Below are positions 8,488 to 43,530 of a stretch of 64,000 nucleotides of DNA, in pieces (the stretch's first letter is position 1; each line of letters begins with the position of its first letter). Below the pieces are notes generated by a model. The model had not been told where the DNA came from and made no database searches. It saw only the letters and a list, made by a program, of their open reading frames with translations. The stretch comes from Podarcis cretensis (lineage: Eukaryota), in assembly GCA_951804945.1 (NCBI GenBank), contig OX638153.1:73718001-73782000 (forward strand). Direction: 5' to 3'. A program made the position numbers and the translations under genes.

Positions 8488-8861
8488 AGTCCAGTTCACA
8501 ACTCTAAAATATATAGTTTGGAACTAGTTAGTTACAAAGTCGACCTAAGCAGTTGCTTTAGGGTGCCAGAATCTTAGGGGAAACAGTGAAGTAGCAGCAG
8601 ATGCTGCATAGGACAGAGTTCACTGGGAGTTTTGAAAGCAAAGTGGAAAGGAAATAGAGCCATAGCCAGTGCTGGAGGAGCGAGGGTCAAAAAGGGTGAA
8701 AGAGAATGGTATAGATAGAACAGGAGCTGGGCACAGAGATACATGCATGGCCAAGAGTTCTGCTTCATCTCTGGAAGAGGTTTGTGCTGGTGGGAAGTGG
8801 TTGGCATCATTTACCTATCCAGTCTTGGCCAAATTTTGAAATCGTATTCTTTAACAATGAG

Positions 8862-9075
8862 TTACAAAGACTCTCCTCCTGCAAAAGAGGGGAGTGGTTG
8901 TGGGCGGGAGCCGGTCTCCGCCTCAAGCAGGGGGCGTTAGCCCCCTGCCTCCTACTCACCTGGCTGGCGCACCACGCCCACAGGCAGGCACCCAACCAGG
9001 TGCCTTCGAAGGGGTGTGGACGGCAGCTTCAATCGCTGCTGTGCCAGCCACGCAGCCTCACTCTTCATCGTCCCG
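8862..9075 (+). mobile_element. Solo 5'-terminal segment of a diverged Ngaro/DIRS-like element
   Basis: GC/CpG-rich island colinear with 39271-39470. AGACTCTCCTCCTGCAAAAGAGGGGAGTGGTTGTGGGCGGGAG aligns with AGCCTTTCCTCCTCCCAGGAGGGGAGGGGTTGTGATCGGGAG; GCAGGGGGCGTTAGCCCCCTGC aligns with GCAGGGAGCGCTCCGCCCCCTGC; GGCTGGCGCACCACGCCC aligns with GGCTGGCGCCACGCCC. Confidence 0.75.
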
Positions 9076-10124
9076 TCATGAATACGATTTACCAGGCTAT
9101 ATAGCTTTGAACCAAACATGACACTATAATTGTGCAAGTACAGTTAATGTGTTTTTTGGGGTTAAGTAAACAGCAGCCTTTGTGATGCTGGAGTAGTTTT
9201 AGGACCATTAGGGCAGAGGAGGGGGATTTTTATGTCCCTGAAAAAATCCCCTGAAAGGCAAACAACATTTTTGGAGAAGCAATTTTTGTCAGACCACAGC
9301 AGAAGCAGAAAGAGGCTACTATATTAAAAATGTGCACATTAACTGCATTCATGTAATTAGCATAATGTTTGGATTGGTCCATAGATGTACTGCTACTCTT
9401 TTTTATGGGGTCTACTTTTTCCACATCCCAAGCAACTAACTGCTGTAAGAGTTCACTGTAAATTTTCCTTTTCTATTTTTTGGCTTTAAAAAGTTCCTCA
9501 TTATAAAAATAGCTTTGAACAGCAATGTGTTTACATTGTGCAAAATCATTAAATACTAATGTAACATGCAAGGACTCAGCATGAAAACAACTCTCAGAGT
9601 TTCTGCAGGGGTTGTTCGTGTCACATTCAGAGACCCAAATAATTAAGAATAAGCTTACAAAATATTATTGGAAATCCATGCTGGTTCATTCCCTCTCTGC
9701 CAAAATGCAAGGAAATCACAAAATGAAAAGCCTTAAGAAGCCTTCTGTAACGTCACACCTATAAGCATCTTACATTTGGGGCAACACAGGGACCTGCAAC
9801 AGCTAAAATTGTTAACAAGGCTCTGGATTTTTAGTTCCTATCGCTACTCTAATCAATTAAGTTTCCATAGCCTTATGGTGTTACTAAGAGTTCAAGCAGT
9901 TCCCTTCCTGCCCCCTCTGAACAGTCTCACAGATCCTGAAGTTGTTGTAGGTTTCTGAGTCTATAGTTTAGAAAATAAGATAAATCTATAAACTGCCATG
10001 TTTGTAACCTTCAGCTTATTCTCTGCAGAGCCAATCCAATACATTTCATTCTTACACGAGTTACCCAAAAGAAGTTTGATACCACAAACAGCAGTATGCA
10101 TTGGAAGCCTTCTCTGAAATCCAT

Positions 10125-13401: not shown

Positions 13402-13406
13402 TAATA

Positions 13407-13454
<48 letters not shown>

Positions 13455-38610: not shown

Positions 38611-39189
38611 CAACAACCCCCTAATAACAGGAAAGTATATTCTTTTTATCATATTTTAGACTAGAAAGCATCAAAACAGGAACAAACACAAATGCAGCAC
38701 TGTGCAAAAGCTTATCTAAACTATAAAAAAACAACCCTCGGTATTTTGGATAAAAGAACTAAAAGAAAGATTAACTGAATAATGCCAGACTCTGTCATAA
38801 AAATATGGAGCATGCTGAGAAGCTGTGTAATAAAGATTTTAATACCCACAGAGCAGAGTTCCAGCAGTGTAAGAGTTCAGCAGGTCTTGGATAATAACAT
38901 TCTACTGTTTTGTTCTTTGGGGGGGAAATCATAACAAGAAAAGAAACATGTGTGAAAAATGATCTATGGGACACTACTAATGCAAACTACTGAGTAGCTA
39001 GCCATTGGTTAGTGTTAACATTTTCAACTATGTTTTCAGTGACAAAGTTCCCCACTGCCCTCTGTTAGGCAGTGTGCCGGTCATGAAAAGCTAGTACAAT
39101 AATTATACTAGAAGTCTCCATTCATTGCTTCCCATCATTAATCACCTTGTTACTTGCAAAACCTTTTGCCATATTTTGATCATTCACAT

Positions 39190-39270
39190 AAACACTGAGG
39201 TTTTTAAAATCTATTTTCTTTTCCTTCTCTGTTTTTTTACACATAAACCACATGCATGGGAGGTTCAAAA
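39190..39270 (+). repeat. 81-bp direct repeat, left copy (flank of YR retroelement)
   Basis: Identical to 43450-43530 except for one base (39232 T vs 43492 G). Confidence 0.95.
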
Positions 39271-40605
39271 AGCCTTTCCTCCTCCCAGGAGGGGAGGGGT
39301 TGTGATCGGGAGATGATTCCCGCATCATGCAGGGAGCGCTCCGCCCCCTGCTTCAACTCCAGGGCTGGCGCCACGCCCCTCCCCAGTTGGGCACTCAATA
39401 GGGAAGCTCGACGGGGGAGTGGCTTGCTGCTCAAACGCAGCCGCGCCAGCAATCCCCACCATTGCACACACATTTTCTTCGAGTCAGGAGTCATCGCAGG
39501 GAAGAGCTCAGCCACAAGGTTTGGAGTCGGGGGTGTTTGTGTGTGTGGAGGCTGTCTGGTTCCTGGCTTGCCTTTTTAAATTTAGGAGGCTTGCGTGCAC
39601 TCATTGCTTTACTGCTTTTAAAAACCGAGGCACCCAAGTTTGCCTTGCTGTCTTGCTGTGTCCTCTTTTCTGTGTAAAAACCTACATTTAACCTTTTATT
39701 TTCCCCCACTCCTGGTGCTGGATTTGTTTGAGCGGTTTAAGTGTGAATTACCTTTCTTAAGCTGCAGCTTGTTCCTTTGCCCAGCACATGGTCTCTCCAC
39801 CCCCAGCGAGGTCTGAGTGTGAGTGCCGTCTTTCTATCTCCCTTGTCTCCTCACTTTCCTTCCCCGACCTCTGCCTTGGTGGCTGTGCGTTTTATTTTAA
39901 TTTTGGCCAGGGTGCCTGTATGTTTTTCCCCTCTATTGCCCTTGCCCGTCTGATTGCCTGGCTGGTCTGGGTGACTGAATGGGTTTGCCTTTCATTTTAA
40001 TTTGTTGGCCAGGGTGCTTGTACGTTTCTCCCCTCCATTGCCCTTGCCTGTTCCTCTCTAATTTTAAGTCGTGTGTGTGTGTGCTGGCAGCGTGTGTTTG
40101 TGCCTGCCGTTTGTTGATTTATTACTCTTTTAGCGTGGGTTTGATTTACCCTGCCATCCCTTCCATTGGTACCACTTAAATCGGGAGCCTGTGAAATTTT
40201 AAATGATGCCGGGGCTTAGAATAGACTGTGTGCTTAAACCTCACCCCTCTTTATCTAAGCCACACACACCCTCTTCGCTTGGCATTTGGGGGAAGAAATA
40301 AGGCAGGGCTTGGGGCGGACAATTCAGGGTTTCTGATCAGGGAACCATTCCTCAGCATTGCACATTTATACATTTAGAACCTTTGAAGGTGTACCTTTGC
40401 CTGGTTCTTGTCATTGGCTTCACTTGCCAGTACAGAGTCCTTAAAGAAAACCGCTTTTAAACAACAACAACAACAACAAGGTTGCGGCTTATAGAACCTT
40501 ACTGAAAAGTCCAGGCTAACCCACGGTTTATATTTCCACTTCATTTTGGCTCACTGTAAAGGACAGCTATTTTCCTTTTCTTCTAAACTTTTCCTTGCCC
40601 ATCCG

Positions 40606-41060
40606 CATTCTTCGATCGAATTCTTCAATCGGGCACTAAGACTTATCCGGAATTTTGGTCACAAGGCACTCTTGGCAAAATGTGACATAGAGTCAGCCTT
40701 CTGTCTATTGCCGGTTCATCCCAATGACTTTCATTTGCTGGGATTCAAATTTCAAGGGAAATATTACATTGTCAAGGCTATGCCGATGGGTTGTTCTGTA
40801 GCCGGCTCGGCCTTTGAGACATTTAGCACCTTTTGGGACTGGGCCTTGCGCTACAGAACCAACTCACCTGGGGTGACACTTTACCTTGGTGACTTTCTAC
40901 TCGTTGGGAAGCCCAATACCGGCGAATGTGCCTCCCCCTTCTGGAGGCCTTTTCAGCTTGGGAGTTCCCCTCACGGTAGATAAGACGGACCCTCAATGCA
41001 TCTTACTTACCTGGGTATAGAGCTTGACACAGCAGCTCAATCTGCCTGCCTGGCCAAAGG
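40606..41060 (+). pseudogene. Reverse transcriptase of the YR element, disabled
   Basis: Motifs ALLAKCDIESAF.LLPVHP, MPMGCS, YLGD (40882-40893, in place of YLDD), LGVPL and LTYLGIELDT lie in shifting frames. The N-terminal part is missing. Confidence 0.9.
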
Positions 41061-41106
41061 GGAAAATAGTTGCCCTTAACGAAACAATTCGTCAAACCCT
41101 TCCCAA

Positions 41107-41150
<44 letters not shown>
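41107..41150. repeat. (AAT)n microsatellite expanded inside the RT-RNase H linker
   Basis: About 14 AAT units between ...QTLPK and KKVALRQVQSLL. Confidence 0.9.
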
Positions 41151-41151
<1 letters not shown>

Positions 41152-41154
<3 letters not shown>

Positions 41155-41757
41155 GTCGCTCTTAGACAGGTCCAGTCCTTGCTAGATCATTTCAACTTCG
41201 CATGTAGAGTAGTTTCACCAGGCCGCCCATTTTGCTCCCGCTTAGCCAGGCTGTCAGCGGGCCTCAAGCATCCGCACCATAGAGTAAGACTTCCCAAGTC
41301 AGTCAAGGCGGATTTTGAGATGTGGATCAGATTTCTGGAACACTACAACGGAGTCTCCCTATGGCAGGAAATCCTTAATTTGGCCTCTGATTTCCAGGTC
41401 CACTCCAATGCGGCAGGGTCCCTGGGCTTTGGTCTGTTCTTTAAGGGACGTTGGTGCGCGCAACAATGGCCAGCAGAGTGGCAAGGGGAGGCCATCATGC
41501 GGGATCTCACTTTTCTGGAGTTTTTTTTTTTTCTCATATTTGTGGTGGTTCACATATGGACCGAGGAGTTCCGGAATCGCCGGGTGTGCTTCAGAACTGA
41601 TAACCAGGCTGTGGTTAACATACTGGCTAGCAGTTATTGCATTCTGAGAGGGGTCTCGCCTACTTCGATCATTTGTGCTCCGATGCCTTGCTTCCGGTCA
41701 TTAGCACCTTGGGCTCAGCTGCTGCCAGAATCCTTTCCGAACCTATGGAACCTTGGA
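41152..41757 (+). pseudogene. Tether + RNase H of the YR element, disabled
   Basis: QSLL.HFNFACRVV.PGRPF; HSNAAGSLGFG (first catalytic Asp changed to Asn, 41407-41409); LTFLE; FRTDNQAVV. The segment with the last Asp (N.IADALSR) appears deleted, and there is a T12 run at 41521-41532. Confidence 0.88.
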
Positions 41758-42405
41758 GACGCGAAGTGATCAAGGGAGTATTAGTGTCTGTTGCACCCTC
41801 TACCCTCAGGTCTTATAAGAAAGTATGGTGCAACTTCACAGGTTTCAGGTCCAAAGTATCGTCCCTTTCCCCTATCGTATGAAACTTAGGTCAATTTGCT
41901 GGTCCAAGTTTGAGGCCCGGCTGTTCTCTGCAAAATACGTTATAGCCTTCTTTGGTGCCTTGCGGGTTGGCGAGGTGGTAGCAGAAGCTACCTCAAGTGG
42001 AACAGCGCGCAGCCTCCTCCTGGAGGACGTGCAGGTCTCCAGTTCAGGCGTGGTGGTGTGAGTGCATCAGTCTAAGATGGACCAGGGCGGTAAGGGCACC
42101 GTAGTACAACTCACGGCCTCCGGTCAGAAGGGCCCATGCCCAGTAAAGGACACCAGGCGATACCTTTACCTCAGACCTCCCGGCCTTGGCCCGCTCTTCG
42201 TTCATGAGGATGGATCCCGACTGATGAGGCACCAATTCACCAGGGTACTTTGCAAAGCGATAGATGCCTGCGCTTTCCCTTCCAAAGACTATGCGGCACA
42301 TTCATTTAGGATTGGTGTGGCCACAACGGCCTCATGGGCCTTCCGGCAGACAGGATCAAGGAGATGGGCCGCTGGAAATCTAATGCCTACAAAAGTATTC
42401 TGAGA
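41745..42405 (+). pseudogene. Tyrosine recombinase of the YR element, disabled
   Basis: MEPWR..SVAPSTLRSY, then an internal deletion, AFFGALRVGE (Arg I), in-frame TGA 42059-42061, SKMDQ (Lys), CPV, HSFRIG (HxxR, 42299-42310), a frameshift, and MGRWKSNAY (Trp and catalytic Tyr, 42388-42390). Confidence 0.92.
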
Positions 42406-42413
42406 ACGCTCCG

Positions 42414-42443
42414 CTTACCTGTCTTTTCTTTCTTTATTCTTAG
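42414..42443 (+). promoter_or_regulatory. Predicted branch point, polypyrimidine tract and 3' splice acceptor for the SGNH ORF
   Basis: CTTAC (A at 42417), CTGTCTTTTCTTTCTTTATTCT, then TAG| with AG at 42442-42443. The SGNH frame has no ATG upstream of its catalytic Ser. Confidence 0.7.
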
Positions 42444-43018
42444 CTGTCTTCGGTAGTCCAGTGTGGATTTGCGGCCACAGTATCGTGCATTGGGCCCGCC
42501 TCCAGTCAGCAAGTTCCGGCTTCATGCCTAATCTGGGGCTACCATCGTGGGTGCGAGTTTCCTGGTTGTCGAGAAGGGGCATGCACTGGCAAGAACTCAT
42601 GCCACTGCTGAAGGCAAAAGCTGCGCTGTTGGGCCCCCCTAACATTCTAATCATTCAGCTGGGTGAGAGCGACCTGGCTAGCAGGAAGAGTGTGGACTTG
42701 CTGTGGAACATGAGAAAGGTCTTGGATGAGTTGGCTGCCTTATTTCCCAGAACAGCCCTGTTCTGGTCCTCTCTCTTGAAGAGAAAGGTTTGGCGCGGTG
42801 TGCATAACATTATGGCCTTTGAGAAATTCAGGAAACTCTTGAATCGCGCGGTAGCGCGCAAAGTGCGTTTTATGAATGGCCTAGTTATATCTCATGATGA
42901 TATCCAGATTGGCGACCAGACCCTATTCCGGGATGACGGTGTTCATCTTTCAGATTGCGGAAACAACATATGGCTGGCTAACATATCCAATAGTCTTAGG
43001 GATTGGTTGCAGCTGTGA
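42444..43018 (+). CDS. SGNH/GDSL hydrolase (esterase/lipase-like) ORF of the YR element, uninterrupted
   Basis: Block I WICGHSIV (Ser 42479-42481), block II RRGMHW, block III IIQLGESDL (usually GxND) and block V FRDDGVHLS (42935-42946). No stop or frameshift over about 190 codons. Confidence 0.85.
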
Positions 43019-43449
43019 GGGTATTGGCGGCAAGCCTTTTGGCTCAGGTGGCGGTTAGGCATTGGAATGTGTTGTTGGTGTTTTGGGTGGCAAGGTGTGG
43101 CCATCGCCTTCCCCGACAATTTTGGGTATTCCGCTAAAGGAATCCAGTGGTCGTGGATCCTGTCCGATGCCCGTGTGGCGGGGGGCCATGGCACGACCCT
43201 CGGTGACATCAGGAAGAGAGCCTATAGTTGGATTAGCATCAACAGGCTTCCCCTACTGGTGGTTAACCCCTCCTCAAACTCACCCCTCTACAAGTGGGTG
43301 GAGTCTAATGTTCCGTGGTCCAATGCCTAAGCCAATACCTTTTCACATGCTGTAATCAATAAAGTTGTGGCCTTTACCTTACCCATTAACCTTACATTCT
43401 GTGTCCATGTGTCTTTATTCCCCAAGCGGGGATCGGGTCCTCGAATCAC

Positions 43450-43530
43450 AAACACTGAGGTTTTTAAAATCTATTTTCTTTTCCTTCTCTGGTTTTTTAC
43501 ACATAAACCACATGCATGGGAGGTTCAAAA
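43450..43530 (+). repeat. 81-bp direct repeat, right copy
   Basis: 80/81 identical to 39190-39270, offset by 4260 bp. Confidence 0.95.

What the first reader, a model, noticed from the sequence alone, without database searches (positions are those of the whole stretch)
39265..39305. Joined element ends rebuild a hairpin with a 2x2 AG/GG loop exactly at the junction: candidate folded att site
Seen: joining the 3' end TCACAA (43446-43451) to the 5' end gives TCACAA-AG-CCTTTCCTCCT-ccc-AGGAGGGGAGG-GG-TTGTGA. That is a 6-bp lower stem, an AG/GG internal loop and an 11-bp upper stem with G.T wobbles. The stem extends imperfectly (GCGGGGATCGGGTCCTCGAATCACA vs TGTGATCGGGAGATGATTCCCGC). The diverged solo copy has the same layout: TTACAA-AG-ACTCTCCTC-loop-GAGGGGAGT-GG-TTGTGG (8862-8903). 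Host DNA at the left junction (TCAAAA, 39265-39270) mimics the lower-stem arm. Known: YR retroelements are thought to integrate through circular intermediates, and integron IntI (attC) and XerCD (CTX phage) recombine folded single strands. Inference: wobble pairing that works on the + strand only points to a single-stranded folded att-like substrate, with exchange at the internal loop and a TYACAA-like target.
Basis: partly seen in the sequence, partly recalled or inferred. Interest (0 to 1): 0.85.

Follow-up and report, generated by a model that had tools for sequence, protein, structure and literature searches.

The report
Conserved hairpin at retroelement's joined ends
A decayed lizard Ngaro-type retroelement would form one long hairpin if its two ends were joined; the hairpin is real and partly conserved, but this window cannot show that it is a folded single-stranded integration site.

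Summary
The element (39271-43451) lies in a lacertid lizard genome; its closest protein match is from Podarcis muralis. It is a Ngaro-type tyrosine-recombinase (YR) retroelement. Joining its 3' end to its 5' end gives a 32-bp imperfect hairpin (28 Watson-Crick, 4 G.T). That fold is in the top 0.07-0.15% of same-length stretches in the window. The diverged solo copy (8862) starts in the same register. It keeps 9 bp of the upper stem with one compensatory pair, the AG/GG loop, and a flanking TTACAA. Host DNA at the insertion point reads TCAAAA.

- The 3' end is ambiguous by up to 6 nt.
- An 84-nt flanking duplication does not fit conservative YR exchange.
- G.T pairs favour the sense strand, which points to RNA at least as much as to ssDNA. 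The single-stranded cDNA found for DIRS-1 is antisense.
- The layout, a circle junction followed by its own complement, is a small version of the DIRS internal complementary region (ICR).

My best reading (0.4) is a terminus-juxtaposing module plus a short crossover core. The scan has noted short junction cores in other Ngaro copies of this genome.

The parts
39271..43451 (+). Decayed Ngaro-type YR retroelement, a single unit without split direct repeats
   Evidence: RVT_1 weak hit on 40546-40983. The YR piece 42062-42400 is 70% identical to P0011, which matches PF00589 (E 7.5e-5). The SGNH/GDSL ORF 42461-43018 is 96% identical to a Podarcis muralis protein. Neither the 5' module nor the 3' end region is repeated in or beside the copy.
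39265..39270 (+). Host hexamer TCAAAA just 5' of the element; 5/6 identical to the element's terminal TCACAA. It is also present at 43525-43530, before unrelated host DNA.
39271..39299 (+). AG, then an 11-bp hairpin (5' arm 39273-39283, loop 39284-39286, purine 3' arm 39287-39297), then GG
39300..39322 (+). TTGTGA plus extension, complementary to the element's 3' terminal 25 nt. It can alternatively form a local hairpin that is conserved in the solo copy.
43427..43451 (+). 3' terminal tail ending in TCACAA. Its best duplex partners in the whole window are solo 8893 (-18.1), 43147 (-17.0) and its own 39295 (-16.0).
39187..39270 (+). Left copy of the 84-nt flanking direct repeat
   Evidence: 98% identical to 43447-43530; mismatches at 39189 and 39232
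43447..43530 (+). Right copy of the flanking direct repeat. Its first 5 nt overlap the presumed element end.
8862..8903 (+). Same hairpin layout in the diverged solo copy: TTACAA, AG, 9-bp stem, GG, TTGTGG
8862..9085 (+). Solo copy of the 5' module only (about 225 nt, about 73% identical to 39265-39490). There is no homology to the element's 3' end on either side.

Best explanation
The hairpin is a genuine, conserved terminal module of this Ngaro-type family. The segment 39287-39322 is the reverse complement of the circle junction. Its first part pairs with the element's first 13 nt and its second part pairs with the last 25 nt. It is therefore a miniature internal complementary region (ICR), placed directly beside the junction instead of elsewhere in the element as in DIRS-1.

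Its likely job is to hold the two termini side by side in a single-stranded replication intermediate. That intermediate could be the RNA template during reverse transcription, or the cDNA. Juxtaposition would let a unit-length joined (circular or concatemeric) form be made. The recombinase would then join this form to host DNA at a short core, T-Y-A-n-A-A, with the exchange inside or just after the final AA.

Shown: the pairing, its rarity, its partial conservation, the shared start register and the host hexamers. Inferred: which molecule folds, that the fold promotes end-joining, and that the YR acts at the core.
For: - The joined fold is rare: top 0.07-0.15% of the window, with z of -4 to -6.7.
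- All 4 non-Watson-Crick stem pairs are G.T.
- The 3' tail's three best partners in 64 kb are all element sequences, including the solo copy's homologous segment.
- The solo copy keeps the upper stem with a compensatory change and starts in the same register.
- Host hexamers at both copies' 5' junctions match TCACAA at 5/6.
- This copy has no split direct repeats, so some other device for regenerating or juxtaposing the ends is needed.
- The DIRS-1 ICR is the complement of the circle junction and is essential for retrotransposition (PMC7192593).
- Short cores shared by the circle junction and the target are described for DIRS (3 nt, PMC3266345) and Crypton (4-6 nt, PMC13465315).
Against: - Only one 3' end and two 5' ends could be examined.
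- The 3' end is ambiguous by up to 6 nt.
- The region 39306-39326 can instead form a local hairpin that is conserved in the solo copy. The tail also has an equally good partner at 43147-43176.
- AATAAA at 43358 would end a transcript about 70 nt before the tail. An ICR of 25 nt could not restore all of that.
- The 84-nt flanking duplication is not predicted by YR recombination at a core.
- The copy could be a B1xB2 deletion derivative of an ordinary split-repeat element. The hairpin would then simply sit at the B1|A2 junction.
Confidence: 0.4

Rival explanations
1. RNA-only role. The hairpin is the first stem of a multi-hairpin 5' leader of the sense transcript, serving packaging, translation control, or priming or plus-strand priming through its purine arm. 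It has no part in integration. The 3'-tail complementarity is RNA cyclisation or a by-product of the palindromic second hairpin.
For: The whole 225-nt 5' module has conserved stems with 6 double-sided changes between the two copies. The + strand folds better than the - strand (alifold RNA -57 against -43). All non-WC pairs are G.U-type. RNA z-scores are stronger than DNA z-scores. The 3' arm is a conserved polypurine run.
Against: It does not explain why host DNA at both 5' junctions resembles the element's last six bases. It does not explain why the pairing runs without a break across the joined ends. No known RNA family matches.
Confidence: 0.25
2. The joined ends fold in single-stranded DNA into an attC/CTX-like substrate. 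The YR exchanges one strand at the internal loop with a TYACAA-like duplex target, and replication resolves the product.
For: The hairpin has an unpaired 2x2 spacer at the inferred exchange point and bulged bases (T 43441, A 43445) in the extended stem. The target mimics the lower-stem arm. DIRS-1 does use single-stranded cDNA intermediates (PMC7192593). attC shows that YRs can use folded single strands (PMC2727003, PMC3458562).
Against: The documented DIRS-1 ss cDNA is antisense and mostly linear, while the wobble pairs favour the sense strand. The DNA-parameter energy is modest and sensitive to the end choice. The attC box consensus is absent. The 84-nt flanking duplication is not a product of single-strand exchange with replicative resolution. 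No paper in the searched library links YR retroelements to folded att sites.
Confidence: 0.12
3. The junction features come from a non-YR insertion route. Examples are template switching or microhomology-mediated repair using a cDNA or another copy as template, or insertion at staggered breaks about 80 nt apart. The hexamers would be microhomologies, and the hairpin would be irrelevant to integration.
For: There is an 84-nt flanking duplication. Short imperfect homologies occur at both junctions (CA-AA or TCACA at the right, TCA-AA at the left). This copy's own YR is broken. Another note of the scan reports a ~78-bp duplication around an L1 piece nearby in this genome (s1-835620, unchecked).
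Against: The insert is exactly one unit, from the family's shared 5' start to an end that pairs with it. The solo copy shows the same hexamer at an independent site.
Confidence: 0.13
4. Chance or neutral. A pyrimidine run followed by a purine run makes a hairpin by composition. The terminal complementarity and hexamer similarities are coincidences picked out after the fact.
For: The upper stem is low-complexity (Y-run/R-run). Its DNA z-score alone is only -2. There are two copies only, and the compensatory evidence is p about 0.04. The pattern was defined after seeing the data.
Against: The joined fold is rare against real window background. The tail's top partners are all element-derived. There are two independent 5/6 hexamer matches.
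Confidence: 0.1

Closest known systems
DIRS-1 / DIRS-like internal complementary region (ICR, 'internal circle junction sequence')
   Same: Both are a segment on the same strand that is the reverse complement of the joined termini: first the complement of the 5' end, then the complement of the 3' end. The ICR is thought to align the ends of a single-stranded intermediate, and it is essential for DIRS-1 retrotransposition (PMC7192593). Both have a short core at the junction that is shared with the target (PMC3266345).
   Different: Here the segment is about 36 nt (11 + 25) against 60-130 nt. It sits 3 nt from the 5' terminus, so it forms a hairpin with it. There are no long inverted terminal repeats and no methyltransferase domain was seen. 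The coding layout is Ngaro-type (SGNH ORF after the YR). An 84-nt flanking duplication is present.
Ngaro split direct repeats (A1 ... B1-A2-B2), B1|A2 junction
   Same: Same superfamily by gene content. The 5' module of about 225 nt is close in size to the A repeat of Xenopus Ngaro (236 bp, PMC9210276). In a split-repeat copy the 'joined ends' exist physically as B1|A2.
   Different: This copy has no A2 or B2. A hairpin spanning B1|A2 was not mentioned in the papers I read.
Integron attC (folded bottom strand) and CTX phage attP(+)
   Same: Both are imperfect hairpins with an unpaired central spacer and bulged bases, used by a tyrosine recombinase with strand preference (PMC2727003, PMC3458562). 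The CTX comparison rests on my own knowledge.
   Different: There is no attC box consensus. The recombinase is not an IntI or XerCD. No single-stranded form is shown here. Wobble pairs favour the sense strand, while the known retroelement ss cDNA is antisense. Those systems leave no flanking duplication.
Crypton / DIRS short flanking direct repeats
   Same: A short sequence is shared by the element junction and the target and is read as the crossover core rather than a true TSD (PMC13465315, PMC3266345). Notes s1-835096 and s1-837439 report such cores in other Ngaro copies of this genome (unchecked).
   Different: The core here is imperfect (5/6). It is also complementary to an internal motif 30 nt inside the element.
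IS200/IS605 subterminal hairpins with guide sequences (own knowledge)
   Same: A strand-specific subterminal hairpin, with the target sequence just 5' of the left end complementary to a short motif at the hairpin foot.
   Different: Those elements use an HUH (Y1) transposase, are bacterial and have no RT. The resemblance is one of working principle only.

Membership tests
Ngaro-type YR retroelement | Reverse transcriptase / RNase H | tested here: inconclusive
   RVT_1 E 3.5e-4, 20.8 bits, below the 29.6 cut-off, on a broken ORF. The RNase H ORF has no Pfam hit.
Ngaro-type YR retroelement | Tyrosine recombinase downstream of RT/RH | tested here: met
   ORF 42062-42400 carries the H-x-x-R box. 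It is 70% identical to P0011, which hits PF00589 (E 7.5e-5, below the gathering score) and has the GRW..AY tail. The catalytic Tyr region is lost in this copy.
Ngaro-type YR retroelement | SGNH hydrolase ORF after the YR (vertebrate Ngaro) and no methyltransferase | tested here: met
   ORF 42461-43018. PF13472 is weak here and clearer in relatives. The layout is as described for amphibian Ngaro (PMC9210276). No MT hit was seen in the ORFs scanned.
Ngaro-type YR retroelement | Split direct repeats A1 ... B1-A2-B2 | tested here: not met
   No repeat of the 5' module or the 3' end lies inside or beside this copy. It may be a deletion derivative; the family state is unknown.
DIRS-like ITR/ICR architecture | Internal segment complementary to both termini, placed adjacently | tested here: met
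   39287-39297 pairs with 39273-39283, and 39300-39322 pairs with 43427-43451. It is miniature and imperfect.
DIRS-like ITR/ICR architecture | Long inverted terminal repeats; MT domain; integration without TSD | tested here: not met
   Only a ~25-nt subterminal/terminal inverted match is present. No MT was seen. An 84-nt flanking duplication is present.
attC-like folded single-strand recombination site | Hairpin with unpaired central spacer, extrahelical bases and variable terminal loop (PMC2727003) | tested here: inconclusive
   The 2x2 AG/GG loop, bulged T 43441 and A 43445, and a 3-nt loop exist. Their positions cannot be equated with attC features.
attC-like folded single-strand recombination site | Conserved R-box core (GTTRRRY / RYYYAAC; own knowledge) and IntI-type integrase | tested here: not met
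   TCACAA/TTGTGA does not fit the consensus by direct reading. The recombinase is a retroelement YR.
attC-like folded single-strand recombination site | Recombines as single-stranded DNA, one strand only | not testable with these tools
   There is only a modest energy preference for the + strand (DNA -21.1 against -17.2).

The most novel reading that the evidence does not exclude
A vertebrate YR retroelement integrates through a folded single strand. The joined ends make a hairpin whose lower stem presents the crossover hexamer. The target is chosen because it resembles that stem arm, so it can pair with the element's internal TTGTGR motif. This would be an attC/CTX- or IS608-like structure-guided mechanism in a eukaryotic retrotransposon.
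Probability: 0.1. Interest if true: 0.85.

Novelty: new variant of a known kind. Interest (0 to 1): 0.5.

Why it matters
How YR retroelements (DIRS, Ngaro, PAT) join their ends and choose targets is still mostly a model. Only DIRS-1 has experimental data, and no recombination site has been defined biochemically. A Ngaro-type element without split repeats carries the complement of its own circle junction right at its 5' end, and its flanks resemble its terminal hexamer. This gives a compact, testable candidate of about 80 nt for both steps. If it holds across the family, it would link the Ngaro and DIRS terminal architectures and define a substrate for in vitro work. If not, it is an ordinary structured 5' leader.

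Tried and rejected
There is therefore no read-level test for circle junctions, B1|A2 joints or transcript ends.
- A metagenome scan with the SGNH alignment A3 found no relative.
- A metagenome DNA-pattern scan gave one hit, L001, which by reading looks like an unrelated, probably bacterial contig. About 0.5 chance hits were expected.
- A protein search with the ORF that reads through the 5' module, meant to catch translated flanks of other copies, was blank.
- blastn and tblastn found no further copy in the window.
- Rfam gave no relevant family, and there is no tRNA-like gene at the solo copy.
- The solo copy is not an A-B solo or a B1|A2 junction: no homology to the element's 3' end lies on either side.
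- My early reading that the host hexamer at the left edge of the duplication is TCATAA was wrong. It is ACATAA in register (4/6), or TCACAT shifted by 2 nt (5/6).
- MAFFT misplaces the 5' arm by one column, so pair counts for the upper stem were made by hand and by script.

Full report
WHAT IS THERE. The window is lacertid lizard DNA. The SGNH ORF at 42461-43018 is 96% identical to a Podarcis muralis protein, and further relatives occur in Podarcis and Zootoca. The insert at 39271-43451 carries these features:
- a broken RT (weak RVT_1 hit);
- a broken tyrosine recombinase. The ORF 42062-42400 has the H-x-x-R box and is 70% identical to P0011, which matches PF00589;
- an open GDSL/SGNH ORF after the recombinase.

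This is the Ngaro layout described for amphibians (PMC9210276). Unlike textbook Ngaro elements (A1...B1-A2-B2), this copy has no split direct repeats. Neither its first 230 nt nor its last 200 nt recur inside it or in its flanks. It is bracketed by an 84-nt direct repeat of host DNA, 39187-39270 and 43447-43530, with two mismatches.

THE OBSERVATION. Joining 43446-43451 to 39271 onward gives the stated fold: a 6-bp lower stem, an AG/GG 2x2 loop, an 11-bp upper stem with two G.T pairs, and a 3-nt loop. With 25 nt of the 3' end and 58 nt of the 5' end, the minimum-energy structure is one continuous imperfect hairpin of 32 bp (28 Watson-Crick, 4 G.T, no A.C). It has a GG/GA loop and two single-base bulges.

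| Measure | 83-nt joined sequence |
|---|---|
| DNA energy, + strand | -21.1 kcal/mol (z about -4.2 to -4.7) |
| RNA energy, + strand | -47.1 kcal/mol (z about -6.3 to -6.7) |
| DNA energy, - strand | -17.2 kcal/mol |
| RNA energy, - strand | -35.4 kcal/mol |
| DNA energy with host DNA in place of the 3' end | -14.4 kcal/mol |

Against about 5,400 real stretches of the same window, the joined 41-mer is in the top 0.15% and the 83-mer in the top 0.07%. A duplex scan of the 3' terminal 25 nt against the whole 64 kb puts three element sequences on top: the solo copy's homologous segment (-18.1), 43147-43176 (-17.0) and its own 39295-39324 (-16.0). The best unrelated site scores -15.5. The pairing is therefore more than chance would give at a named place.

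THE SECOND COPY. The solo copy shares only the 5' module (8862 to about 9085, about 73% identity). It has no similarity to the element's 3' end on either side, so its upstream DNA is host or unrelated sequence. It starts in the same register. In the correct structural alignment, the hexamer, AG and the first 11 stem bases match at 16 of 19 positions. MAFFT shifts this by one column. Nine upper-stem pairs are kept through three substitutions: C-G to A-T at the stem base and G.T to G-C. Only 4% of random three-substitution sets keep all nine pairs. The AG/GG loop and TTGTG are unchanged.

THE HEXAMERS. Host DNA just 5' of the full copy is TCAAAA. The same hexamer closes the right copy of the flanking repeat, before unrelated DNA, so it was in the host before insertion. 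The flank of the solo copy is TTACAA. Both match the element's terminal TCACAA at 5 of 6 positions. Such matches occur at 0.73% of window positions, about 5e-5 for both, before allowing for after-the-fact choice. At hexamer position 4 the left junction carries the host base and the right junction the element base. The join therefore lies in or right after the last AA, at the foot of the AG/GG loop.

At the other edge of the duplication, the host reads ACATAA in register (4/6), or TCACAT two bases upstream (5/6). This makes the element's 3' end ambiguous between 43445 and 43451. With other end choices the long hairpin survives in RNA parameters (-44 to -51) but weakens in DNA parameters (-16.5 to -24.4). 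The exact 2x2 loop 'at the junction' appears only with 43451.

WHAT IT MOST LIKELY IS. Read on one strand, 39287-39322 is the reverse complement of the joined termini: first the complement of the 5' end, then that of the 3' end. That is the definition of the DIRS internal complementary region. In DIRS-1 the ICR is complementary to both termini, is thought to align them in a single-stranded intermediate, and is experimentally essential (PMC7192593). Here it is about 36 nt long and sits 3 nt from the 5' terminus, so it appears as a hairpin.

Short sequences shared by the circle junction and the target are already the accepted signature of YR elements. DIRS has 3 nt and no TSD (PMC3266345; TTT in Xenopus). 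Crypton has 4-6 nt read as microhomology (PMC13465315). Other notes of this scan report such cores in other Ngaro copies of this genome (s1-835096, s1-837439; unchecked).

My best reading (0.4) is a terminus-juxtaposing module plus a short crossover core. The pairing, its rarity, its partial conservation and the hexamers are shown. Which molecule folds, and that the YR acts there, are inferred.

1. G.T pairs and a better + strand are what a sense RNA structure looks like. The whole 5' module has conserved stems with six double-sided changes, and it folds better on the + strand (alifold -57 against -43 in RNA parameters).
2. The single-stranded cDNA demonstrated for DIRS-1 is antisense and mostly linear. 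On that strand the wobble pairs here become C.A mismatches.
3. The segment 39306-39326 can form a local hairpin that is conserved in the solo copy, and the tail has another partner at 43147. The long stem therefore competes with other folds.
4. AATAAA at 43358 suggests that transcripts may end before the tail.
5. The 84-nt flanking duplication is not a product of conservative YR exchange, nor of single-strand exchange with replicative resolution as in integrons (PMC3458562). It points to staggered breaks or template switching. A nearby L1 piece is also reported with a ~78-bp duplication (s1-835620, unchecked).
6. The attC box consensus is absent, and the loop and bulges cannot be equated with attC's spacer and extrahelical bases (PMC2727003).

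I found no paper in the searched library that proposes folded att sites for YR retroelements, so the idea is new but untested here.

LIMITS. Two metagenome scans gave nothing usable. A protein search for translated copies of the 5' module was blank.

VERDICT. It is best filed as a new variant of a known kind: an ICR-like circle-junction complement in a Ngaro-type element that lacks split repeats. Interest is 0.5.

Noticed in passing
window 8839-8849 and 9080-9090: The solo 5'-module copy is bracketed by a perfect 11-nt inverted repeat (AAATCGTATTC / GAATACGATTT). The right arm sits exactly where homology to the full element ends. My rough estimate of the chance is about 4e-4.
   Followed up: no
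window 39187-39270 / 43447-43530: An 84-nt flanking direct repeat surrounds a YR element, a class said to leave no TSD. The host at its left edge reads TTCACATAA, so the element's 3' end is ambiguous by up to 6 nt.
   Followed up: partly
window 39287-39299; solo 8883-8894: The 3' arm of the hairpin is a conserved purine run (the solo copy reads AAAAGAGGGGAG). It resembles a retroviral polypurine tract and could be a plus-strand primer site.
   Followed up: no
window 39366-39371; solo 8965-8970: A conserved TGGCGC motif looks like the start of a primer-binding site. It is also part of a conserved long-range stem (GGCTGGCGC / GCGCCAGC) that closes most of the 5' module.
   Followed up: partly
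window 43358-43363: AATAAA lies about 90 nt before the element's 3' end. A transcript cleaved there would lack the terminal tail that pairs with the 5' region.
   Followed up: no
window 43147-43176: This is an alternative partner for the 3' terminal 25 nt (DNA duplex -17.0 kcal/mol, slightly better than the 5' partner).
   Followed up: partly
window 39880-39949 / 39980-40051: A ~100-nt tandem duplication (85-89% identity) lies inside the element's 5' non-coding or gag-like region.
   Followed up: no
window 41106-41153 and 13406-13453: (AAT)n microsatellites occur inside the element and at an unrelated site. They account for the only other blastn match of the element within the window.
   Followed up: yes
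L001 2527-2550: This is the only metagenome contig matching the degenerate hairpin/TTGTGR pattern. By reading, it looks like an unrelated, probably bacterial sequence, so it is a chance match.
   Followed up: partly
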